DNA from: Chlorokybus atmophyticus
Taxonomy: Eukaryota; Plantae; Mesostigma and Chlorokybus algae
Direction of reading: 5' to 3'
DNA length: 64,000 nucleotides
Assembly: GCA_009103225.1 (NCBI GenBank)
Contig: RHPI01002438.1
Location: 490,750-554,749 of the forward strand
Shown here: in pieces, positions 18,227-41,200 of the stretch
Layout of the letters: the number at the start of each line of letters is the position of its first letter
Numbering within the stretch: the first letter of the stretch is position 1
The notes under the pieces: generated by a model
The model's input: the letters and a program-made list of their open reading frames with translations, nothing else
Databases searched by the model: none
Told to the model about the DNA's origin: nothing
Program-made: the position numbers and the translations under genes

Positions 18227-20696
18227 ATGGAGTACAGGCTGCAGCAGCAGACCCCGGGCCAAGTGTAAGCTGCGGGTGTTGCGCATGGTTGACGTTTGGT
18301 GGTGTGCAGCGCTAAGCCTTGGTGTTGTTTGCTCTTGCGCTTTGCTGCAGCCCTGCCTCGTCGGGGCGTGCATGTGACATAGCTACCAACATGTTGCTCC
18401 GTCCTGGCAAATCTTGTTTGCAATCAATCCAGTTCTCAGTTGCACATGGTCAAGCATAAGGGACTTGAATTTGCTAAGCAGATAGATTTGCTGGCTTAGT
18501 TGAGTCATAGTTTGTGGTATAGTAGCTTTGCTTCGCTGTGCATGCAGTTGAAGCTGGGTGGCTTGTGCAGACTATGTTGCCTGTGCGGGACGCCTATTGT
18601 TTCAAATCCGGCGAACATGTGCGTGCAGTGCATACGCACGCAGGTGGACATCACAGAGGGCATCAACAAACAGGTAGGTTGATTTGGTCTGCCTGTATGT
18701 GTTGCAGATTTAACCAAAGCAAGCTGTTGGCAAGGTAGTTACGCTGATATTCTGCCTACGTTACATGGCGTGTATTTGGAGTGTTTCGCCAATCTGCCAA
18801 CATTTGCCAATTCGCCAAAGTCCTGCTTACTTCTTCGTTCGCCAAGCTGTTGTGGATTTCGCTGTTCCTTACTTGCGCACATCATGTGTGTGTAGGCTGT
18901 TGTGCTCAACTGTCAAGAGTGCAACCGATGGCATACACCACCAAAGGCTTGGCTCAAAGCTGAGCCCGAGAGCAAAGAGCTCCTCACCTTGTGCTTGAAG
19001 AAGTTGAAAAACCTGAACAAGGTGAGCTACGAGCAGCTTCTCACTCTTGTGCATGTGCATGCTTGCGCATGTTTATGAGTAAAGCGTCAACTTTGGTACT
19101 AAATTGCAGGTCATGGTTGTGCATGTCGTGTTGTGCATGTGTTTGAAATAGTTGTTCTGGTTATCAGGTCAAGCTAGTGGATGCGGGTTTCATATGGACA
19201 GAGCCGCATTCAAAAAGGCTGAAAGTGAAGGTGACAATACAGAAAGAGATATTCAATGGGGCCATTGTACAGCAGGCGTTTGTCGTTGAGTATGTCGTGC
19301 AGAACAACCTGTGTGATATCTGTCAAAAAGCAGCCGCCAACTCGGACCAGTGGGTGGCCGCAGTGCAGGTATCGCCGATATGATGCTGGCTATGTTGGCC
19401 TTGTTGGTGATGCAAAACTGCTGCGTGCAGCAATTTTTCTGTAACGTGCTTCAAAGACATTAATTATGTATCTGTGGTGCAGGTCCGGCAAAAGGTTGAG
19501 CACAAAAGGACATTTCTGTTCTTAGAGCAGATCATTCTGAAGCACGCAGCTGACGCTTTCACGGTCAACATCAAGGAGATGCATGATGGCGTGGATTTCT
19601 TCTACGCGAACCGCAGCCACGCCATGAAGTTTGTGGAGTTTCTCAACGCTGTTGTGCCGGTCAAATCGCGCCATGACAAGCAGCTCATCTCTCACGACTC
19701 GCACTCCAACACGTACAACTACAAGTACACCTTTTCTGTTGAGATTGTGCCGGTAAGTGAACATCTTATGTTTGCCCTGTTGGTTGGCAATTGTGCACTG
19801 ACTTCTTCTGACTGTGTAGTGTTGTTGACGTGGCATGTTTGTGACAGGTTTGTAAAGACGACTTGGTTTGCCTTTCAGCTAGAGTGTCGGCGGCGCTGGG
19901 TAACATCGGGCAGCTGTTGCTTGTGACAAGGGTGTCGAACGCGCTGCTGGTATTGAACCCGCGCACGCTGCGCACGGCGTATGTCGATGCGACTACATAC
20001 TGGCGTTATCCTTTCCGCCCGCTGATGACGAGCAGGCAACTCATTGAGTACGTCGTGCTGGACATTGAGCCGATGGACACGGTTGTGACGGCGGGATCAA
20101 TGAAGTACGCTCTAGCGGAGGCCACTGTTGCGCGCGCATCGGACTTTGGCGTGAACGACACACAGTTCATCGCCAGGACGCACCTCGGACACCTGCTGAA
20201 GCCTGGCGACCTTGCCATGGGCTATGATGTGGCCGGCATCAACTCCAACGACGAGGAGTTTGAGAAGGTTCTCGCCAAGTCCGCCGGCGACCTCCCTGAC
20301 GTTGTCCTTGTCAAAAAGAGCTACGAGGAGAGCCGCAAGAAGAACCGCGGGCGCAGGCGGCGCGCGTGGCGCCTCAAGCGCCTCAATGCCGAGCAGGCGG
20401 ATGTTCCCATGAAGGGCGAGGCCGACAAAGACCAGAACGACTATGAGAAGTTCCTGGAAGAGCTCGAGGAGGATCCGGACATGCGTTCCAGGATCGCACT
20501 GTACAAGGACCCTGAAGCTGTCGCCGCCGCACAGCAGCAGCAGCAGAAACAGCCACAGCAGCAGCCGCCGCCTCAAGCGGATGAGGGTGATGCTGAGCCC
20601 TTGCCTGAGGTGCCCCTGGAAGAGCTTCTGGATGCGATGACGCTGGCTGAGGATGGCGAAGACGATGATGATGATGTTGAGAGCATGGACACCTGA
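18227..20696 (+). CDS. NMD3: 60S ribosomal export adaptor NMD3
   Basis: Exon 1 (18227-18264, MEYRLQQQTPGQV) joins LCCLCGTPIVSNPANMCVQCIRTQVDITEGI. Later exons give DAGFIWTEPHSKRLKVKVTIQKEI, AVQVRQKVEHKRTFLFLEQIILKH, KQLISHDSHSNTYNYKYTFSVEIVP and an acidic C-terminus ending at 20696. Confidence 0.96.
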
Positions 20697-29045: not shown

Positions 29046-31171
29046 ATCAGGGCTCATCCGTCCAGGGGGGCTGCCATAGCAAACCCCTGCATACATGGGC
29101 CGCAGAACACCAAGCAGTTTCAGCAAGCACTGACACTGGTGCACGTCTGAAGGCTGTCTTTCTGCCTCGGATGTCCAACTGTGTATGAAGTGTAGATATT
29201 GCAGGCATGCACAAGGTAGCCCAGCGTGCTCATCCGGTTTCTGAACTGCAGGGGATGCGGTGCATGTGTTGAGCAGCAGCTATGGTAATGACTTGCGGGG
29301 TCTTTTGACCACTGCAGTGTCTGTTGCCTATCTGGGTGATTGCGTGTTATGTAGCCGTAACGTATGGTGCTTACTGGTCTCTCACCAGACTGCCTGTGCT
29401 TAGGGTGGAAGCACCTCTCGTTGTGGCGGCCACCACAACCTCTTGGTCAGGTGTCCAGAGTTTGTCTCTCAGTGATCAATCACAACTGAACCTGGTCTGC
29501 ATGCCTTGAGGGTACAAGCATGTAGTGTCTGTACTTGCGGGGTGTAAAGATGGAGTGCTGATAAGCCCGCGTGCATGGGGTCATAAGCATGAGACATGCA
29601 TGTATGTTCCATTCTCATGTGTTGTTGTGACGTATGAGCATTCTACTGTTAGAGCGCTTGTATGTGAATTTCTGGACGAGGTTGGTGTGTGTGTAGAACC
29701 TATTCTCTGAACACGCAGCAGATTAGGAGTTGACGTGCACAGGAAAGTACTTTGCAATCAACTGTGCTGTCTGCATAGGGTAAATAGAGGCATGAGCTGC
29801 GTGTGGCTTGCACGGTAAATGTCAGCAGGTGCACGCTCTTGTTCCTGAATTTCTTTCTTGTCCACCTCTTGTCCCAACATGCACATAACAAGATTGACGT
29901 GTAAACTTTGCAGTTCAATTTATTGTGTAGTGTTTATATGTCCGCCAAAAATGAGCAATTGCATTTGCATTGTTAGAGTTTGTCTGAGGTCTTACCTGCA
30001 ACAGTGCGTGCACAGTATCCATTCGATGGTCACCTGTCTGACAATGTCAACTCATTGGGACTAATTTGTTGAAGTTGGTCACGTAACAGCTGCTAGCACA
30101 TCACATCAGTTTTGCAATGTGATTGCCATTTGCGTACGGTGCACAGTTGTCAATAACGTCATGCGCAAGGCGAGTCACGCATGCGGCGCGCACATGCCGT
30201 GTACACGCGCCGTCCGTTGTGCGACCGTTCACGTTACGCCAATACTCGTCAGTGACGCCAGCCGTGGCAGGCGAGTCACCTGAGGCGACGCAATCAATCG
30301 TCATCAAGTTACGGTGTTTCATTCTTTTAGTTCACTGCGAGGTAGGTTGTTGGGTACTGTTCCGAACAAGGAGATTGACTCAAGTTGAATCACTGACTAG
30401 ACTTGCACATCACTCAACGTTGGCATTTGCCACGTGCATGCGGTCAGCGGCGGCGGCGGAGCTGTCTTTGTGGGTGTTGCCGGCGTTGCAGGTGTGCTTG
30501 TCTGGCTGCGGCCGCCTGTCGACCAGGCTTCTTTGGAGTGTTGGGCGCTAGCGGGCAGCTGAGAAGCGTACGTTGACGCTGGGGCGGCATCAATTGGGGT
30601 AAGTGCTTAAGTGTGCGTTTTGCTTGCATGAAGCTGTCCTGGCGTTTCTCGGCTGCTGGGCTTTCTTCTAACATCACAAATGCAGTAGCTTCGGTAGCAT
30701 GTACGAAACGCACTGCTGCACGCGGTCAACATTCTTTAGCGATTATCAGATGGTAGATTCAGCGCTGCTGTCTTTCCGCGTCTTGCGTGTTACAGCTGGG
30801 CTGACAACAGCGTACATGTCTTCTGCCTCTCAGTCAGGATGGCACTAGCAGCCAAATCTACAGCTTTGGTTAGCTATTGTAGAAACGGATGCTTGACTTG
30901 AATGGCTACACTGTCCATTCATAGCGTTTGGTTTGTCGCAGTCGGCACAAAAGCAGCTAGCTGCTTAATTTATGAACTATCAGCCCTTACACCTGCATAA
31001 TCACAATCACGGCATGGTTATCTCTTTTGATTTCAGAAGCTTTTGCTTAGCAGTTTGCCGCACTTTGGTAATCAATTTCCATATGCTTCAGCTTTGGGCA
31101 GTGCGCCACCTGGGAGCTTAGTCAACATACGCTGCTGCCATACCCTTCGCTGTCTTGTGAGAACGACAGTC

Positions 31172-33546
31172 ATGACGCGTGCAGCAGTAGCGCCCAGCAT
31201 AAGCTTGGCGCTACTGCTGTGTCTGAGCTTATATGCCAGTCATTGCGCTGCTGCGCTCCCTTTACAAAGGCGCCGGCTTCTCCAGTCAGGTAGTGTTGGT
31301 CTGCCAAATGTGTCAGCAACTGCGGAATCTTCGAGTTGGGTTTGTGTTGACTTCTGTCGTGTAATTGCAAAAACTGTGCAGATTCATCCAGCGTGACAGT
31401 CGCAGCTTTCTATGATCCTCCTTTCATCAACTTGCTGCCCACCGATCTGGCGGGCACCACCGATAATGGCCAGACTGGAATTGTGGCATCAGCTGACCTC
31501 CGCGACCACGCCTTGTAAGTGCACTGTTGTTGCACAAGGATTGTGTGCAACCTTCATGCCATTGTCATGTTCAACTTCATTGCTGACTGTGTGCATAGGG
31601 CGATGCCAAAATTCGGGTATGCTCTGGCCTTGTTTGATCTCGTTGCGCTGCGTTCCAACATGCCCTACCTATTCAACATGACTGGTAAGTCCTCAATAAA
31701 CACTCTCAGCTGCTATAGTAAAGTTCATAAATAGAAACTGTTTGCAGTTGGAGTAGTTGACAATGAGTTGTCTGTGTTTGCCAGGTCAGGGCATGTCGGA
31801 TGTCTGTCAGTATGTTGGCGAGACGACAAGTGATCTCGTAAGTAGACGCATACGCAATGCAGCGGCGGCGGTTTTCTGTATTGTGTTTATGCTTATGTGC
31901 TCATTGTGCAGCGAGTGGCGCTGGTGCCACTTCCGCGGCTGGCAGATGTTGATTATGTAAACCCCTGCGATCACGACCTTGATCTGAAGGTAGTGCACCT
32001 GCGTTCTTAAGTGAGCTTCATCATGATGTCTATGCACGCACTTGGATGTGAACGCAGATTTGCGAGCATGCTTGCACTGTGCGCTCATTGGGGTTGCTAT
32101 CTAACACCTCTCAAGTGGTAATTCTGCAGAGAATCCCTATGTACGAGTCTGGAATGGTGATGATGGTGCGGTTGGCGTCGTTTGAGGAGACTCAGGTATG
32201 CGCATGTTTATATGTTGGTGGCTTGTATGCAACTTGTAGAGCTGCTGTCATAGGTTGAACGTACCAAAAAGCACACAACAAAATGTTGCGCTTGTTTGCT
32301 GCAGACGTCTCCAGGCGCAGCCTTCTTGCATGCGCTGAAGCAGCCGAGCTCCATCAACGCTATGTGCGTGTTCGTGATCGGTATCATCCTATCGGGCCAC
32401 GTGATGTGGATGCTGGAGCGCAACAGCAACAGCGAGACCTTCCCTAAGCCATACCTTGAGGGCCTGGATGACTCGTGCTGGTGGTCGGCACAGACGGTTA
32501 CCACGGTGGGTTATGGAGACAAGGTCCCCATCACCCTTCTCGGCCGCGTGTTTGCGTTCGTGTGGGCCGTGGCGGGCCTCTTCATCATCGTGTTCTTCAC
32601 GGGAACCATCACGTCGGAGATGACGCTCAGTCGCAAGGGTGCCGAGCTGCAGGGGCTGGCGGACATCACGTCGGGTACCAACGTGGGCGTGATGTCCAAC
32701 TGGATGGACGCCACGTCCGCCGTCATTGGCGGCATCGGCGCCAACCTCATCGCATGCGGCAGCGGCAACGACATTACGTCTTGCGCGGACATGCTCAAGA
32801 AGAAGCAGGTTCAGGTGGTCATCGGGGACTACCCAACGGTTGTGAACTTCGTGTCCAACACTGTCGGCAATAACGGCGAGTATGACATCATTGGAGACGT
32901 GTTCAACGAGGGCAATGTGTACGACTACAACATCGTAGTTAACGTCAATGCGCCAGGCGGTGCCGATCTTTACGATAAACTGCTCTCCACGCTTGAATCT
33001 GTTGAAGGAGGCGGCAGCTATGATCGCATCACCTCGCATTATTTTGGGGATGCTCGTCGCAAGGCCCTTGCTGCGCAGCGCACGTCCACAGTCCTCAGCC
33101 TCAGCTCCCGCGAGAACTCGTACAACTGGTGGCTGATTGTCATCACCCTGTCCGTGTTCTTGTTCTTCATCCTGCTCAACATCTACACGTGGGCACGCGA
33201 AGCTCAGCGAACAGGCGAAATCCATCTGCCCAGGTGAGAGACACATATGTTCCTTACATCTGTGACATTGATCAGCTTATGGCGCGTCAATGTATGTCGT
33301 GATGCACACGGCACAAGTGTTGTCCGTTAGATTTCGCAGACCAACAGGGTATTGTGTTGCAGACTTGGGCGGTGGATTCTGCGGCGTCTAGACACCTTCC
33401 ATGGACGCAAGTGGGTGTTGGAACCCGTGCCCGAGAACATCCCGTTAGAGAGCGCTCGCAGCCGGTTGCGGGGGCCTTCCGATCCGGATTCGTGCGCTCC
33501 CAATGGGCAGATTGTCAACTCTGCTCCCAGCCATACCTTATTGTAG
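31172..33546 (+). CDS. GluR0-like ionotropic-glutamate-receptor-family channel with K+-channel selectivity filter, signal peptide, S1/S2 lobes and an extra C-terminal TM helix
   Basis: Signal-peptide-like start (MTRAAVAPSISLALLLCLSLYASHCAA). S1-like exons VTVAAFYDPPFI, KFGYALALFDLVALRSNMPY and IPMYESGMVMMV. Large exon: M1 ..IILSGHVMWMLERNSNSETFPKPYLEGLDDSCWWSAQTVTTVGYGDKVPITLLGRVFAFVWAVAGLFIIVFFTGTITSEMT, then S2, then hydrophobic YNWWLIVITLSVFLFFILLNIY. Last exon 33362-33546. Confidence 0.85.
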
Positions 33547-34431
33547 GTTAGTTGCCTTGGAGAGTGAGAGACATTCCTTCACTTGTAGTGTATTAACCCA
33601 ACTAGTGGTCCCTTGCTGCTTGTTAGTTGGTGGTTGTGCCGGCACTCACGCAGTCAAAGTGCCTTGTTTTTTTTGTATGCAAGTGCGGTTGATTGCTGTG
33701 TTGTAGGCATGAGTCTTGTGTACACTTGATTATGCTAATGAATCGGTGTGCTTGGGGATATATCACATCATGAGTCTTGCTCGCAGATTTGTACATCCAA
33801 CTGAAAATGTGGCTGAGTTTGCAATCTCATGCAATCTCGTGTAGAGTGCACGGTGATACATCAACAGGAAAGTGATACGTCCGATAGGGCAGAAGAAGAA
33901 AGATAGGGCGGATGCGCTGCTTCCTCATACAGCTGTCACAACTCTCAGCGCCTTGGTGTTGACCGTCTGTGTATACCTTTTGCTGTTTATATCTTGTGCT
34001 GTAAGTAGTAGTGGAGTTTATTAAGTCAGTGGTTGGCCAAAGCATTTCCTGTCTCATGCTGGGTCGACAAGTCTACAAGGCAACTCAAAAACGGTGTGTA
34101 CTTGCAGTTGCGTTGCTCTTAGGGTTCATTGTTACTAGTGAGGCATTCCCCTAAGGCCTTTTCCTTCCAACGCTTGCTTGGGTACAGCAAGCACCTCCGC
34201 TGTCTGATTATTGTATGCATGCATAAGTCACACCTTGTCATTGTTGGTGGCATACACATTGCTGCGTCATGCATTCTCAGTTTGTGCATGCTGCGACTTT
34301 GCATCCCAGTGCATGACCCTGTGCATAACAGAGAAACGAGATCAACGACAACACGAATCCTCAGGGCAACATGAGACAGCGCACACATGTGCGTGCGTGC
34401 ATGCGCGTGTATGTTCAGACAACATTGTGTG

Positions 34432-36845
34432 CTACGGTCGGCGAACCCAAGTACAACTATCTAGTAGTGCCGCAGCTGTCGCGTTCAGTGCTCTGCATCG
34501 GGAGACCACTTCTGCGGTCACAAGATGATACGAACATCAGAGTACGTACACAAGCACACATCCGTTGCACACACTTGCATCCTCGCGACTCACACCTTGA
34601 AACCTTGCCGTTGCTCCTGGTAGAAACTGGCTGGCTGCTGGCAGTTGTTTCTCGTCCCAACTGTAGCCTGTATGTCAATTACGCACATATAAGTGAAGAC
34701 TATACTGTTTTGTCAGTCAACCAAACAGGACATATACTTGGAGACATGCACACACTCATGCAGACACACACACACATGCACAAACATGCATGCACACCCG
34801 CGTGAACGCGCACACGCAGACACGCGTAAGCGTGCACATACATGCACGCACCCGTACTCACTTTCACATGCACCCGCGCACGCACATGCCCAAGCCCACA
34901 TACCTTCAAGCCACTTCGCAGGCATTGCAGCGTACACCGCAGCCCCCACCCCACCTGCACATCCAACCCCAATGACTATCACTCACCATCACTCTCCCCC
35001 CTCCCACCCACCCCCCGCTCCCCCCACCCCCACCCCAACTCACCTCCTCCTCCTCCTTGCACCCCGAAGCACCCCCCGTTGCGCGACCGGCTCCGCAGGA
35101 GGCTGGATGCGGGGCTGCCGGCCGCGACGAAGTCGGGGAGCTGCAGGGGAGACGGGCTGCTGGAACGAGAGAGGGAGAGGGAGTCGGTGGAGTATAGGAG
35201 GGAAGTGAAGGCTGGGAGATGTGGATAGACACAGTTGTGAGTAGACAAGAAGTAGAGCGTTTCTCAACACGTGCGTGCTGATGTGCATGCGTGCGTGCGT
35301 GCGTGCGTACACCCGTGCACACGCACGCATACTTGAAAAGTGCGGCATAGTCAGCAATGACTGCCAGTGCGCTCGTGGTAAGGGTGTGCTTGCACACGCT
35401 CGTACACCCGCGTGTGCACGCACACGCACGCACAGGCAGATACAGATACATTGAAGACGTATGTGTATCTGTATCTGCCTTGCAAGCGGTGACAACAGTC
35501 AGCTCTTTACCAAGCTCATCACCTGCTCTGTCGCTCATCTGAGGCTGGTCAGCGTCTCGATCAGAAGGTGTGGGTGCAGCAGTCGAAGGTGCATACTGTG
35601 TTGCAGTGGGTTGTGTTGGAACGGTGGGTGCTGCGGGTGCTGCTGAGGTGCTTGAAGTGAAGCGGAGCCTGCGCACACATGAATTGGCGCACAGAAGAGT
35701 AGAAGCATAAGGGCACACGTGTGCGTGCGTGTGTGTCCACACGCATGTATGCCGCTTGGGAATTAAATGTGAGCTTAGGCAATCGTAGACTTGTGCAGTA
35801 GAACTCGGGCTTTTGATTGGTTGTGCACACTGGTGTATGCACTTATCGTTTGTGCAGGTCATGAGTGCGCATATGCTTTCAAGTGCGTGCGCGCATTTGT
35901 CGGTTGGCACGAGTGTTCACATGCGCGTGTGCGTTTTGGTGCTCAGGTGTGTATGTGTGCACCTCTCTCCATCAAGGTTGCGCAAGCCCGGCAGCTTCTC
36001 CACAATATAGGCTCTGTATCCCCGCACATTGCAAACTGCAGCAGAGAATAATAACCACTCACTCTCTTGCAAAACTTGCAAACACAGCACACGCTTGTAC
36101 GAATCAATAAACGCGTTCTCACCTGGGTTCTTCAGCGTGCCGTCAATGTTCTTGAGATACAAACTGCGGAATAGGGGCAGCCCTTGCTGCACGAAGTATC
36201 CATTTAGCAACCCAAAGTTTCATAGCTGATTACAACTCTTGTGTGACCTAACAACAAGTGCGTAACTCTCTACAACTCACAACTCACCAGGCAAAGGATC
36301 TCCTCGAGACTTGTCACTTGGTTGCCCTGTAAAAGGAGGTGCTCAAGGGACGAAAGGGAGCTCAGCCAGCCTGCATTGTGCATACAAACTCAACAGGGAG
36401 GTTAATAGTCTTTGCACAGTGTACGCAATGTCACTCAGTGGCTTACCCAACTTCTGCACGCGGTTGCGCGTAAGCACGAGTTTCCTCAGCTGCGTCAGTC
36501 CCTCGAGCCCCTGTCATGTGAAACCCAAACAGAACAGATGTTATTGGAAACGCAACCTACGGAGCAAGCCAACGTGTTTTATTATGTATAAAGTCTCTCA
36601 CCTCGCACCTTTCAATGGCATTGTCAGATAGGTCAAGCTCGACGAGGTTAATGCACCGCGCGAGACACGCCACCTGAGACAAACCTGCCGTGTAACAAAG
36701 CCACAGTCGTAAAGGTAAATTATAGGTTCATGTTGGAGAGCAGGCTGTGACTTGGGTGCGCATCTTCTGAAGTGGATACGTAGTAACACAATGGTACAAC
36801 AAATCACAAACGTACACAAACACACGCACGCGCACACACAGAGAG

Positions 36846-38228: not shown

Positions 38229-41200
38229 ATGCTGGCGGTTGCGGGTGTGACGGCGGCGGCGGGAGCTCTGGCGGGGGAAAAGAGGCTCAGGGTGGCTCGG
38301 GATGGGGGAGAGGCCGAGCACCTCGAGGAGGAGGATGCGGAGCAGCAGGCTGGCTCGGAGGATGAGATGATGGGCAGCTGCCCGCGCTTATCAGATCAGG
38401 AGGAGTATGAGGCCATTGATAAGGACCTCGCCTGCCCTATTTGCATGGGCGAGATGCGAGACGCATTCATGACGTCATGCGGCCACAGCTTCTGCTATGG
38501 TTGCATTGTGCAGCATTTGAAATCCCGCTCCAACTGCCCCTGTTGCGCGCAATTTATTTCGCAAGACCATTTGTTCCCAAACTTCTTGCTCAACAAGGTA
38601 TTGCATTTTAACATGTGTGATACACTGGAATAGGATGTTGCAAGCTTATACCCACTAAGTCTATGCCTGTTGTGCATTCAATAAGTGCGGACAAGGTTGC
38701 TTTTCGTGGGTGCCAGCAGCATTGTGCACATCCTTCAACTTTGTATGCTGTATGTCTAACAGTTGTTGAAGAAGACAAAACTATCAAGTGGTGGCTCGAA
38801 GGCGCTGTCCCCGGCGCAACAGCTCCGGCACGCCTTGGCCTCAGTGCGTCCTTTATTACAACTGCTGCTGGCCTACCGTGTGCTTTTGTGGGATGCTTAT
38901 TCTGTGCCTACTCAGGGATCGGATATCTCTTCCGATGAGATTGAGGCGCTGGTTGGTCTGCTGCAGGAGCGAAGAAAAGTCATGGAGGTCAGCAAATGGA
39001 CCCTGAAGTTGTTTGCTTGCTTGCTTGATAGCTTGCTGTGTGCAATGCATGCTGAAAGTGTCCTGAAGTTGCTGTGCTCGTGCTCTTTCTGCTCCGGTGG
39101 CTATATTTGCATGATGTGCATTGTGGACACAGGACGCAGTGGCTTTCTGCATTTGCCAGCATGTTGTGCACAGCTGCACACCTACATTGAGTGCACACGA
39201 ACAGTCTGGTATGCTCGTTGCGCCTGAGCACTTGAGGATGTGTTATCCTGCACACAGTGGTTGTATGCCTTGCTTTCTCTCTTCTCGAGTTACTAACGAT
39301 CAGGCTACACAGGCGCAAGATGCTGAGAGCTCCCTTGATTTGGTGATGGACTTCATGCAACGCTCGCGAGCGCACAAAGCGCAGTTGCTGGCAGAGGTAA
39401 CACTACATGGATGATTACGAGCACGCTACTAACACATCAGCACAGTCTCCTTACACAACCTAATTGTGTCTGCAGCTGCGCGCTGATCTAGACTGCTTAG
39501 AGATTGACCTCAGAGCCATTTCTTGCAATCAAGCATCAACCACTGCGCCTGCCACCTCCGATCAGCAGTCTTTTCCACATTCCAGCAGTCTTGTACAGAG
39601 CAACCTGCTTTTTTCAGTCCCTCCCAGCCCAAAAGCATCACAGCCGGTTTCTGGTGTCAGGTGGCCCGGGTCACAGAGCGCTTCCAAAACAGCTCACAGC
39701 AACTGGGGGGCGGTAAGTCCTGTCCTCCAGTCCAGAAAGCACACACCCATACCAGCAATACCAGCTCCTACAAACCGCTCTATGGACTCGGCTACTGTAG
39801 CAAAGAAGCGGCGAGTATTTTCGCAGTTTGAGGATTTGCAGCAGGCCTACTTGAGGGCCAGACGCAGGCGGCGTGCAGCTGAACCAACTGTAGCGAGTAG
39901 AGGCGTAGATCAGGGATGGCCTGATGTTGGCGGTGCTGAGCCTGGCAGCTTGGTAGGCCCACATACCACAGTACGCATTGATGCAAGTGCCGGTGCACCT
40001 GCTGCAACAGATGCAACTGGACTAGCAGAGTTCCGGCGGACACTTGCAGCAGTCACGCGGTATGGGCGAATGCAGGTCATGGCAGAGTTGAGACACAACG
40101 ACCTCTTTCATTCCAACATTGTGTCGAGTATAGAGTTTGACAAGGATGACGAGCTGTTCGCAACAGCTGGAGTTTCGAAACGGATAAAGGTGTTTGACTT
40201 TGCCTCCCTCGTTGGGGACTGCCAGAGTCAAACCCCCGTCACAGAGATTTCCTGCAGAAGCAAACTCTCATGTCTAAGCTGGAATAAAGCTGAGAAGACG
40301 CACTTAGCAAGCTCTGACTATGAAGGCGTGGTCACACTCTGGGATGTTGCTACCTCACAGGTATGGCGTTCTACTATTATGTGCGCATGCCACCATTCTA
40401 TAGTGAGACAGGATACACATTCAAGATGCACAAAGCTGCTTAGTCCGCTGTACTCTCATAATCCTGGTTGCAAGCACGCTGCGTTACTAGGTTCTGATTA
40501 GACATGCAGTGCTGTGCAGGTTGCTGATGTGCTGTGGTTTCTGTTGCAGAGTGTCATCGAGTTTGAGGAGCATGAAAAGAGGGTGTGGAGTGTCGACTTT
40601 TCGCGCACGGAACCAAATTTGCTGGTGTCTGGCAGTGATGATGGTAAAGTGAAGGTTTGGTCGGTGAAGCAGGAGAACAGCGTCTTGAATATTGACACCA
40701 AGGCAAACATCTGCTGTGTCAAGTACAACCCAGGCTCTTCGCATCACATAGCTGTGGGTTCTGCTGATCATCACATCCACTCATACGACCTTCGCTGCAC
40801 ACGGGAGCCTCTGTATGTGTTTGCTGGTCACCGCAAAGCTGTATCGTATGTGAAGTTCATCAGTAGCACCGAGCTTGCTTCAGCCTCCACGGATAGCACA
40901 CTGAGGTTATGGGATGTGCGGGAAAACTACCTGGTAAGTTTTCAACTTGTACTAGCATGTTGCCAAACATGCTAACTGCTGTTGGCCTGTTTGCTCACAA
41001 GTTGGTTGTCATTACAGGTGCGCACGTTGAAAGGCCACACCAATGAGAAGAACTTTGTTGGGTTGGGTGCGAACAGTGACTACATTGCCTGTGGCAGTGA
41101 GACCAACGAGGTCTTTGTGTACTACAAGGCGATGTCCAAGCCAACGTGCACACATCGGTTCCAGTCCAGTTCTGACTCGGATGCGGAGGTGGAGGATGAC

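What the first reader, a model, noticed from the sequence alone, without database searches (positions are those of the whole stretch)
31172..33546. Eukaryotic GluR0-type channel: K+ selectivity filter plus an added M4 helix, with no ATD
Seen: the gene is spliced and encodes signal peptide - S1 - M1 - pore helix with TTVGYGD (32500-32520) - M3-like helix (FFTGTITSEMT in place of SYTANLA) - S2 - a further hydrophobic helix - cytoplasmic tail. Established: cyanobacterial GluR0 has this K+ filter but no M4 or ATD; plant GLRs and animal iGluRs have ATD and M4 but lack the filter; the rotifer AvGluR1 is a known eukaryotic case with both filter and M4. Inference: this is a ligand-gated K+-selective channel in an alga, distinct from plant GLRs, and either an intermediate architecture or a domesticated bacterial or cyanobacterial gene. 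The usual S1 carboxylate-binding T-x-x-R motif is not recognisable (the region reads RVALVPLPRLADVDY), so the ligand may not be glutamate.
Basis: partly seen in the sequence, partly recalled or inferred. Interest (0 to 1): 0.75.

Follow-up and report, generated by a model that had tools for sequence, protein, structure and literature searches.

The report
Algal glutamate-receptor-like potassium channel gene
This is a real, expressed gene of the alga Chlorokybus for a receptor-channel that joins an amino-acid-sensor domain to a potassium-channel pore plus one extra membrane helix, and it belongs to a widespread but unstudied eukaryotic family that may sit between bacterial and animal/plant glutamate receptors.

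Summary
Window 31172-33546 (+) holds an 8-exon gene of Chlorokybus atmophyticus, identical to JGI model Chlat1/763 (548 aa). Transcript contigs from two studies show all seven GT..AG coding introns, plus a 5'UTR intron.

The protein reads: signal peptide, S1, M1, pore helix with TTVGYGD (32500-32520), M3 (FFTGTITSEMT), S2, M4, cytoplasmic tail. There is no amino-terminal domain (ATD). M4 lies in the same exon as the pore and S2.

Two AlphaFold models, one built without any bacterial sequences, give a periplasmic-binding-protein clamshell (Z about 20, rmsd 2.4-2.6 Å over about 220 residues). They also give an iGluR-like LBD-TMD-M4 layout.

The gene is not a lone oddity, and nothing points to a recently domesticated bacterial gene.
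- Its closest relatives are two Mesostigma genes (41-43% identity).
- Next come a TARA metagenome protein and a Guillardia protein.
- A larger M4-bearing eukaryotic group follows (Tetraselmis, Platysulcus, MMETSP).
- In an unrooted ML tree these form clans separate from the bacterial 3-TM GluR0 homologues.
- They share derived Cys149 and Cys338, and M4.

The ligand is unknown. The S2 Asp is kept, an Arg sits two positions off the canonical column, and the Ser/Thr contacts are lost.

Verdict: a new variant of a known kind, uncharacterised. K+ selectivity and gating remain inferred.

The parts
30568..30598 (+). 3' end of a non-coding 5'UTR exon. The exon start was not determined; the transcript contigs carry about 135 nt upstream of the junction.
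   Evidence: Loose 5' end of transcript contigs X1 and X2. Its last 30 nt are found once in the window, at 30568-30597. A GT donor follows at 30599.
30599..31091 (+). 5'UTR intron (GT..AG, 493 nt)
31172..31289 (+). Coding exon 1. It holds the start codon and a signal-peptide-like hydrophobic N-terminus (aa 1-27, 31172-31252).
   Evidence: First ATG of the transcript, with an in-frame stop upstream. Hydropathy. Joint seen in transcripts.
31382..31514 (+). Coding exon 2. S1 begins at aa 41, and the exon includes a eukaryote-type loop insertion.
31599..31684 (+). Coding exon 3 (S1)
31785..31837 (+). Coding exon 4 (S1). Cys120 is at 31805-31807.
31912..31989 (+). Coding exon 5 (S1). It holds VPLPR (aa 135-139, 31924-31938) and the insert with Cys149 (31966-31968).
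32130..32195 (+). Coding exon 6 (end of S1, IPMYESG strand)
32305..33233 (+). Coding exon 7. In order it holds: pre-M1; M1 (32344-32418); pore helix (32452-32499); filter TTVGYGD (32500-32520); M3 (32536-32640); S2 (32656-33060, with Cys338 at 32782-32784 and Asp353 at 32827-32829); linker; M4 (33127-33213).
33363..33546 (+). Coding exon 8. It holds the cytoplasmic tail with the conserved LRRLDTFHGRKW motif (33379-33414) and the stop codon.
   Evidence: Joint seen in three transcript contigs. The motif is conserved in both Mesostigma proteins.
33547..33653 (+). 3'UTR, as far as the transcript contigs reach
   Evidence: X1 ends at 33653, X2 at 33630

Best explanation
The locus is an expressed nuclear gene of Chlorokybus atmophyticus. 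It encodes a subunit of an iGluR-superfamily channel with the minimal architecture LBD + K+-channel pore + M4.

Shown here:
- the gene structure and the transcripts;
- the domain order;
- a canonical K+-channel signature (WWSAQTVTTVGYGD);
- a predicted bilobed periplasmic-binding-protein fold split by the pore module;
- a fourth TM helix, followed by a basic cytoplasmic tail;
- membership of a eukaryotic clan distinct from the bacterial GluR0 homologues.

Inferred, not shown:
- After signal-peptide cleavage, S1 and S2 face the outside. Four subunits form an inverted K+ pore, with the P-loop entering from the cytoplasm as in GluR0 and iGluRs.
- Closure of the clamshell around a small ligand pulls on M3 and opens a K+-selective path, driving the membrane towards E_K. 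The ligand is most likely an alpha-amino acid, because the S2 Asp and a nearby S1 Arg are kept. It is probably not glutamate, because the Ser/Thr side-chain contacts are replaced by Asn-Trp-Met and Pro-Leu-Pro.
- M4 packs on the outside of the pore, as in iGluRs.
- The conserved LRRxD(T/S) juxtamembrane motif may be a regulatory, kinase-type site.

Evolution. The gene was inherited from at least the common ancestor of Chlorokybus and Mesostigma. It belongs to a broad, uncharacterised eukaryotic family.
For: - Gene and expression.
- Pore: Ion_trans_2 6e-14 and Lig_chan 1.1e-8. The best PDB sequence matches are K+ channels across the filter. T245, G247, G249, D250 and W237 are invariant across 49 homologues.
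- LBD fold, first model: AF2 mean pLDDT 80.9. VIA-align gives Z 20.2, rmsd 2.6 Å over 218 of 222 residues against an amino-acid SBD, and Z 18.5 against the GluR0 cores 1ii5 and 2pyy.
- LBD fold, control model: built from eukaryotic homologues only, pLDDT 77.5, Z 20.4, rmsd 2.4 Å over 224 of 227 residues of glutamine-binding protein.
- Whole LBD-TMD-M4: Foldseek matches AMPA receptors at E about 1e-14 over about 470-500 columns. VIA alignments reach model residues 478-484 on GluA, GluN and GluK chains.
- Sequence continuity with GluR0-type proteins over S1-pore-S2, for example query residues 90-426 against a Cyanobacterium aponinum protein at E 2e-34.
- The S2 segment alone aligns D353 with the ligand-binding Asp column of glutamine-binding proteins.
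- Phylogeny: Chlorokybus + Mesostigma 100/98. Clan A 100/98, clan B 97/93, bacterial clan C 98/92.
- Shared derived Cys149 and Cys338.
- The tail motif is conserved.
- GluR0 topology and its K+ role come from PMC13099474. The GluR0 and AvGluR1 background comes from PMC11479355 and PMC12332018.
Against: - There are no functional data. K+ selectivity, tetramer formation, ligand gating and location at the plasma membrane are all inferred.
- S1 and S2 do not reach any Pfam SBP_bac_3 or Lig_chan-Glu_bd threshold. S1 alone finds nothing meaningful in the PDB by sequence.
- The canonical Arg column holds Ala in this protein in the MAFFT alignment, with the Arg two residues upstream. The 'GST' loop of S2 is replaced. 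Ligand binding of the classical kind is therefore not assured.
- I could not inspect model coordinates, so the pocket geometry and the proposed Cys149-Cys338 bridge are untested.
- The tree is unrooted and has no canonical iGluRs, GLRs or AvGluR1. The relation of this family to them is open.
Confidence: 0.75

Rival explanations
1. A bacterial or cyanobacterial GluR0 gene was acquired by horizontal or endosymbiotic transfer and domesticated in this algal lineage, gaining introns and M4 afterwards.
For: Outside clan A, the best-scoring full-length matches over S1-pore-S2 are bacterial 3-TM proteins, including a cyanobacterial one at E 2e-34. The M3 motif (FTGTITSEMT) is of the bacterial FTxxxTSxLT type and not SYTANLAAF. 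The tree is unrooted, so an ancient bacterial origin for the whole eukaryotic family cannot be excluded.
Against: - Clan A is separated from the 26 sampled bacterial sequences by supported branches (98/92 and 100/98). The named cyanobacterial protein lies deep within the bacterial clan.
- M4, the S1 insert with Cys149, and Cys338 are shared with eukaryotic group B and are absent from the bacterial sequences.
- The gene has eight introns and GC3 of 0.71 in ordinary nuclear surroundings, with NMD3 and WD40 genes as neighbours.
- Orthologues exist in Mesostigma, so any transfer would be very old.
Confidence: 0.1
2. The clamshell no longer binds an amino acid. The protein would then be a K+ channel that is constitutive, or gated by something else such as an ion, pH, another small molecule or a partner protein, with the LBD kept as a structural or regulatory module.
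For: There is no SBP_bac_3 or Lig_chan-Glu_bd hit. The S/T-x-T-x-x-R motif is replaced by VPLPR, with the Arg out of register. The GST loop is replaced by SNWM in Chlorokybus and by APAPLL / APAALL in Mesostigma. The nearest non-streptophyte relative, P0035, has even lost the S2 Asp.
Against: VPLPR and the Asp are conserved between Chlorokybus and both Mesostigma proteins at only 41-43% overall identity. The bilobed fold is predicted with high confidence. The LBD is kept in all family members.
Confidence: 0.15
3. A secondarily simplified plant-type GLR or canonical iGluR that lost its ATD, working as a non-selective or Ca2+-permeable cation channel like plant GLRs.
For: It is a streptophyte gene with M4 and a Lig_chan hit. 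Algal GLR surveys count all such genes as Ca2+ channels (PMC11085791).
Against: - The filter is the complete K+ signature TTVGYGD with the WW pore-helix cuff. Plant GLRs and animal iGluRs lack this (PMC3483616, PMC11479355).
- SYTANLAAF is absent.
- The nearest relatives by score all carry the K+ filter, and none has an ANF_receptor domain.
Confidence: 0.05

Closest known systems
GluR0 (Synechocystis slr1257) and bacterial GluR0-type channels (LBD structures 1ii5, 2pyy)
   Same: - The order S1, M1, P-loop with TXVGYGD, M3, S2.
- No ATD.
- An FTxxxTSxLT-type M3.
- LBD fold match at Z 18.5.
- Continuous sequence homology over residues 90-426.
   Different: - It has a fourth TM helix and a 67-residue cytoplasmic tail.
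- It has eukaryote-type S1 inserts and conserved Cys149 and Cys338.
- There is no SBP_bac_3 Pfam hit, and the ligand-contact Ser/Thr residues are replaced.
- It forms a clan separate from the bacterial proteins.
- It is a spliced nuclear gene.
[quoted passage not shown] 2011, as described in PMC11479355 and PMC12332018)
   Same: A eukaryotic iGluR-family subunit that combines the K+ signature sequence with M4.
   Different: The reviews describe AvGluR1 as having the full modular eukaryotic architecture, ATD included. The Chlorokybus protein has none. I could not bring the AvGluR1 sequence into the tree, so the relationship is untested.
Plant GLRs and animal iGluRs (e.g. GluA2)
   Same: The LBD-TMD-M4 layout. 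Foldseek E is about 1e-14 over about 470-500 columns, and VIA alignments run through M4. A profile of the family matches GluA2 through its M4 region at E about 1e-18.
   Different: It has no ATD. It has a K+ filter in place of the Q/R/N-type loop, and no SYTANLAAF gate motif. Judging from the family consensus printed against PDB chains, the S1 insert and the Cys pair look specific to this family.
Uncharacterised eukaryotic proteins of the same architecture: Mesostigma viride Mv02118 and Mv07645; Guillardia theta XP_005840214; Tetraselmis astigmatica and Platysulcus tardus transcripts; Atlas clusters of about 470-550 aa labelled Eukaryota
   Same: - SP-S1-M1-P(T[VIT]G[YF]GD)-M3-S2-M4.
- No ANF_receptor domain.
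- Conserved Cys149 and Cys338.
- 41-43% identity to the Mesostigma proteins, with the tail motif included.
   Different: Group B proteins carry a longer, four-Cys S1 insert and match the Chlorokybus protein mainly in the pore region. The Guillardia pair has an N-terminal EF-hand region. None has been studied functionally, as far as I could find.

Membership tests
iGluR superfamily (Pfam Lig_chan PF00060; interrupted-clamshell ligand-gated channels) | Lig_chan profile match above the curated cut-off | tested here: met
   35.4 bits against a cut-off of 30.8, residues 202-327
iGluR superfamily (Pfam Lig_chan PF00060; interrupted-clamshell ligand-gated channels) | S1 and S2 form one bilobed type-II periplasmic-binding-protein fold, interrupted by M1-P-M3 | tested here: met
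   This is a predicted structure only. Z 20.2 with rmsd 2.6 Å over 218 of 222 residues. The control model without bacterial sequences gives Z 20.4 with rmsd 2.4 Å over 224 of 227 residues.
K+ channel pore (Pfam Ion_trans_2 PF07885) | Pore helix plus the TXVGYGD selectivity signature between two TM helices | tested here: met
   52.1 bits against a cut-off of 22.5. TTVGYGD is at aa 244-250. It aligns to the filters of Lmo2059, KcsA and Kv channels. Actual K+ selectivity cannot be tested with these tools.
Prokaryotic GluR0 type | Only M1, P and M3, with the protein ending after S2 (no M4, no ATD) | tested here: not met
   M4 at aa 450-481 and a tail to aa 548. 'No ATD' is met.
Prokaryotic GluR0 type | LBD recognisable as SBP_bac_3 / Lig_chan-Glu_bd, with the S/T-x-T-x-x-R and G-S-T ligand contacts | tested here: not met
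   No such Pfam hit at E <= 1, while bacterial relatives score 1e-20 to 1e-28. The motifs are replaced.
Prokaryotic GluR0 type | Phylogenetic placement among the bacterial homologues | tested here: not met
   A separate clan; the bacterial clan has 98/92 support. The tree is unrooted.
Canonical eukaryotic iGluR / plant GLR / AvGluR1 architecture | N-terminal ATD (ANF_receptor / LIVBP-like domain) | tested here: not met
   S1 begins at about aa 41, after a 27-aa signal peptide. There is no ANF_receptor hit in this protein or in its relatives.
Canonical eukaryotic iGluR / plant GLR / AvGluR1 architecture | M4 helix after S2, followed by a cytoplasmic C-terminus | tested here: met
It aligns with M4 of GluA, GluN and GluK chains. 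A basic tail follows.
Canonical eukaryotic iGluR / plant GLR / AvGluR1 architecture | SYTANLAAF gate motif in M3 | tested here: not met
   The sequence reads FFTGTITSEMT.
Eukaryotic 'GluR0 + M4' family (unnamed; clans A and B of this report) | K+ filter, M4, no ATD, a Cys in an S1 insert after the Arg position, and a Cys in the S2 helix | tested here: met
   Cys149 is present in 4/4 of clan A and 20/22 of clan B, and is a gap in the bacterial sequences. Cys338 is invariant in alignment A2, while 21 of 23 bacterial sequences have Ala.

The most novel reading that the evidence does not exclude
The Chlorokybus/Mesostigma genes and their protist relatives may be surviving members of the missing intermediate grade of iGluR evolution. 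That grade would be an LBD fused to a K+ pore that had already gained M4 and extracellular disulfides, but had not yet gained the ATD or lost K+ selectivity. If so, M4 was acquired once, before the ATD, in an early eukaryote, and AvGluR1 is not the only living link. The family would also mean that some algal 'GLRs', which are counted as Ca2+ channels in genome surveys, are in fact ligand-gated K+ channels.
Probability: 0.3. Interest if true: 0.75.

Novelty: new variant of a known kind. Interest (0 to 1): 0.55.

Why it matters
The accepted account of glutamate-receptor origins rests on two K+-filter proteins. One is bacterial GluR0, which has no M4 and no ATD. The other is rotifer AvGluR1, which has the full architecture. 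That is how reviews from 2023 and 2025 present it (PMC11479355, PMC12332018).

A eukaryotic family with the K+ filter and M4 but no ATD would allow direct tests of three questions: the order in which M4, the ATD and non-selective permeation arose; what M4 does for a K+-type pore; and what such receptors sense in unicellular algae.

It also bears on genome surveys. These count every algal 'GLR' as a Ca2+ channel (PMC11085791).

The limits are clear. This is one already-annotated gene, the family is visible in public protein sets as hypothetical proteins, and nothing about its function has been measured.

Tried and rejected
- Alternative exon 4. An acceptor at 31748 with a donor at 31784 looked possible by eye, but the transcripts use 31785-31837.
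- Word-index search with the full protein. It returned only 6 proteins and none of the Mesostigma relatives. The exhaustive HMMER search was needed.
It was repeated.
- S1 alone against the PDB by sequence gave only chance hits to designed TIM barrels.
- The Mesostigma gene locus is not on record, so intron positions could not be compared.
- Canonical plant GLRs, animal iGluRs and AvGluR1 could not be put in the tree. No tool gave them as usable sequence ids, and I did not type sequences from memory.
- Model coordinates are not exposed. The R139/D353 pocket geometry and the Cys149-Cys338 distance could not be measured.
- Viral origin. Giant-virus-sized IMG/VR contigs do carry GluR0-like genes, but these are only 20-25% identical and their matches end before M4. 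I rejected them as a source.
- Literature searches found no description of this architecture in algae. De Bortoli et al. 2016 and Stroebel & Paoletti 2021, which I recall as relevant, did not come up in those searches and were not read, so prior mention cannot be excluded.
Full report
**What is there.** The window comes from Chlorokybus atmophyticus. The large ORF at 32296-33237 matches the JGI model Chlat1/763 (Chrsp104S01238, P0001, 548 aa) at 100% identity. I rebuilt the gene from GT..AG sites. The eight coding exons are 31172-31289, 31382-31514, 31599-31684, 31785-31837, 31912-31989, 32130-32195, 32305-33233 and 33363-33546. They give 1647 nt, and the translation is identical to P0001.

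**Transcripts.** Public run contigs from two studies (X1 of 2013; X2/X3 of 2021) lie on the exons only. They carry all seven joints, each GT..AG, with no differing letters. Their share of sampled words, 0.55-0.58, is close to the exon fraction of the stretch searched. The run type is only guessed as RNA; the spliced contigs are what indicate transcripts. The contigs continue upstream into a 5'UTR exon that ends at 30598, which defines a 493-nt UTR intron at 30599-31091. The ATG at 31172 is the first in 216 nt of known leader and follows an in-frame stop. The 3' end is near 33653. Exon GC is 0.51-0.60, intron GC is 0.38-0.49 and GC3 is 0.71. The neighbours are ordinary nuclear genes: an NMD3 fragment at 19.9-20.7 kb and a WD40 protein at 39.5-40.5 kb.

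**Anatomy.** Hydropathy and the AlphaFold secondary structure agree on the following layout.
- A signal-peptide-like N-terminus, aa 1-27.
- S1, aa about 41-180.
- A pre-M1 helix.
- M1, aa 192-216.
- Pore helix and filter, aa 228-250, with TTVGYGD encoded at 32500-32520.
- M3, aa 256-290, with FFTGTITSEMT where iGluRs have SYTANLAAF.
- S2, aa about 296-430.
- M4, aa 453-481.
- A basic tail, aa 482-548.

Only the tail depends on the last intron, and three contigs show that joint.

Pfam gives Ion_trans_2 (6e-14; 52.1 bits against a cut-off of 22.5) and Lig_chan (1.1e-8; 35.4 against 30.8). It gives no SBP_bac_3, no Lig_chan-Glu_bd and no ANF_receptor hit. Bacterial relatives hit SBP_bac_3 at 1e-20 to 1e-28. 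There is no room for an ATD, since S1 starts about 14 residues after the signal peptide.

**Does the LBD fold as a clamshell?**
- The first AlphaFold model used a 49-sequence alignment and has mean pLDDT 80.9. Over residues 41-428, skipping the pore module, it aligns to amino-acid-binding proteins. The best is Z 20.2, rmsd 2.6 Å over 218 of 222 residues, and the GluR0 cores 1ii5 and 2pyy score Z 18.5.
- That alignment contained bacterial GluR0-type sequences. I therefore repeated the prediction with 29 eukaryotic M4-bearing homologues only. The secondary structure is the same, pLDDT is 77.5, and the best match is Z 20.4, rmsd 2.4 Å over 224 of 227 residues of glutamine-binding protein.
- The whole model matches AMPA-receptor LBD-TMD chains in Foldseek at E about 1e-14 over about 470-500 columns. 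VIA alignments to GluN1/2B, GluA4, GluK2/5 and GluA2 run to model residues 478-484, that is through M4.
- A sequence profile of the eukaryotic family reaches GluA2 through its M4 region at E about 1e-18.

**Ligand site.** In the MAFFT alignment, the Arg column is conserved in 21 of 22 group-B proteins and 23 of 23 bacterial proteins. In Chlorokybus that column holds Ala141, and the Arg (R139, in VPLPR) lies two columns upstream, next to an insertion. VPLPR is identical in both Mesostigma proteins. The Ser/Thr residues of the S/T-x-T-x-x-R motif are replaced by Pro and Leu. The S2 'G-S-T' loop reads S-N-W-M. The S2 Asp (D353, VVIGDYP) is kept. In a search with the S2 segment alone, it aligns with the matching Asp of glutamine-binding proteins at E 0.009-0.05.

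The backbone-binding pair may still survive. I rate an alpha-amino-acid-type ligand as plausible, glutamate as doubtful, and loss of classical binding as a real alternative. I could not measure the pocket because model coordinates are not exposed.

**Relatives.** An exhaustive HMMER search of 1.84 billion representatives found 7223 hits, with 8 at E <= 1e-30.
- The closest are two Mesostigma viride genes: Mv02118 at 41% identity over residues 42-527, and Mv07645 at 43% over 86-529.
- Next is a 989-aa TARA metagenome protein.
- After that come bacterial 3-TM GluR0-type proteins at about 28-33% identity, including one from Cyanobacterium aponinum.
- Among the best 150 hits, many proteins of about 450-690 aa have the same SP-S1-M1-P(TVGYGD)-M3-S2-M4 layout. 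The ones that carry names are eukaryotic: Tetraselmis astigmatica, Platysulcus tardus, Guillardia theta, and MMETSP or EukProt transcripts.
- None has an ATD. The Guillardia pair has N-terminal EF-hands instead.
- Atlas neighbours by features and by shape include clusters of 470-550 aa carrying Ion_trans_2 and Lig_chan that are labelled Eukaryota (Cnidaria-labelled, Chlorophyta, Bacillariophyta). One is a 547-aa cluster aligned over residues 40-539.

**Tree.** I built a careful ML tree of 53 rows and 356 columns under LG+C20+F+G4, with 33 of the 86 rows of the first tree left out to save time. It gives three clans, each on one side of a branch.
- A: Chlorokybus plus the two Mesostigma proteins (100/98), together with the TARA protein and the Guillardia pair (100/98).
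- B: 21 other M4-bearing proteins (97/93).
- C: 26 bacterial 3-TM proteins (98/92), with the cyanobacterial protein deep inside.

The 86-row quick tree agrees. The tree is unrooted, so it shows only that the algal clade is not nested among the sampled bacteria. It does not show which clans are sisters.

Shared characters help here. Cys149 lies in an insert after the S1 Arg position and is present in 4/4 of A and 20/22 of B, but is a gap in all 23 bacterial sequences. Cys338 in an S2 helix is invariant in the 29-sequence eukaryotic alignment, while 21 of 23 bacterial sequences have Ala. M4 is found in A and B only. The insert is also absent from the solved binding proteins and the GluR0 core aligned to the family profile, which polarises these characters as derived. 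I therefore read A and B as one eukaryotic family. The reading 'domesticated bacterial or cyanobacterial gene' is not supported, although an ancient bacterial origin for the whole family cannot be excluded.

**Tail.** The first part of exon 8 carries LRRLDTFHGRKW. The pattern L-R-R-x-x-(T/S)-x-x-G-R-x-W is conserved in both Mesostigma proteins. It fits a basophilic kinase-site pattern (hydrophobic at -5, Arg at -3). This identification is from my own knowledge and is only a lead.

**Mechanism (inferred).**
- The subunit enters the secretory pathway, and S1 and S2 face outward.
- Four subunits form an inverted K+ pore. This N- and C-terminus-out topology was shown experimentally for GluR0 (PMC13099474).
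- Ligand-induced closure of the clamshell opens the M3 gate, and K+ flows down its gradient.
- M4 packs against the pore as in iGluRs. The tail couples the channel to regulation.
- In Synechocystis, GluR0 acts in the rapid response to high external KCl and in cell-volume control (PMC13099474). A comparable role, or a role in sensing external amino acids, is possible in a subaerial alga.

**Comparison with what is known.** Reviews from 2023 and 2025 name only GluR0 and AvGluR1 as K+-filter members of the family (PMC11479355, PMC12332018; also PMC3483616). A 2025 eukaryote-wide iGluR phylogeny does not discuss such forms in the sections I read (PMC12226733). A diatom survey counts GLRs simply as Ca2+ channels (PMC11085791). 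I found no description of the ATD-less, M4-bearing, K+-filter architecture in the searchable library. Two papers I recall as relevant did not come up in those searches and were not read, so prior mention cannot be excluded. The gene itself is already an annotated model, and its relatives sit in public sets as hypothetical proteins.

**Verdict.** The locus is a new variant of a known kind: a member of an unstudied eukaryotic 'GluR0 + M4' family. It is neither a singular intermediate nor a recent bacterial import. Function and selectivity remain to be measured.

The scan also holds a second first-stage note on this same stretch (s1-079575).

Noticed in passing
window 30599-31091: There is a 493-nt GT..AG intron inside the 5'UTR. 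The transcript contigs start in an upstream non-coding exon that ends at 30598, and no upstream ATG occurs in the known leader.
   Followed up: partly
window 33379-33414 (aa 494-505): A juxtamembrane cytoplasmic motif, LRRLDTFHGRKW, is conserved in both Mesostigma homologues as L-R-R-x-x-(T/S)-x-x-G-R-x-W. It looks like a basophilic kinase site or a trafficking signal.
   Followed up: partly
P0038-P0164 (group B proteins), alignment A1 columns after the S1 Arg: The other M4-bearing eukaryotic proteins carry a 25-30-residue insert with about four Cys (R..C..C......CC.DFS) at the place where Chlorokybus and Mesostigma have a shorter insert with a single Cys. Together with the invariant S2 Cys, this suggests family-specific extracellular disulfides.
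   Followed up: partly
P0175 (Guillardia theta XP_005840214; locus L083 1001-6316) and P0179: These relatives have EF-hand domains in a 400-580-residue N-terminal extension, at the position where iGluRs carry the ATD. An EF-hand region ahead of an extracellular LBD is odd, and its topology is unexplained.
   Followed up: no
L003, L006, L007, L008, L012 (IMG/VR contigs of 264-548 kb): Giant-virus-sized viral contigs encode GluR0-like S1-pore-S2 proteins with the K+ filter. They are 20-25% identical to the Chlorokybus protein, and the matches end before M4. An Atlas cluster of 372-aa proteins labelled Nucleocytoviricota points the same way.
   Followed up: no
window 32389-33246 (-): A 285-aa ORF lies antisense to exon 7. 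It is most likely a shadow of the GC3-rich coding strand and not a gene.
   Followed up: no
window 34700-35900: A stretch rich in CA/TG-type simple sequence gives long His/Thr/Arg/Cys-rich ORFs on both strands. The 334-aa minus-strand ORF tested has no Pfam hit.
   Followed up: partly
window 19863-20693 (+) and 39464-40498 (+): The neighbouring ORFs are exons of an NMD3 homologue (OB and SH3 domains) and of a WD40-repeat protein, which is ordinary nuclear gene context.
   Followed up: partly
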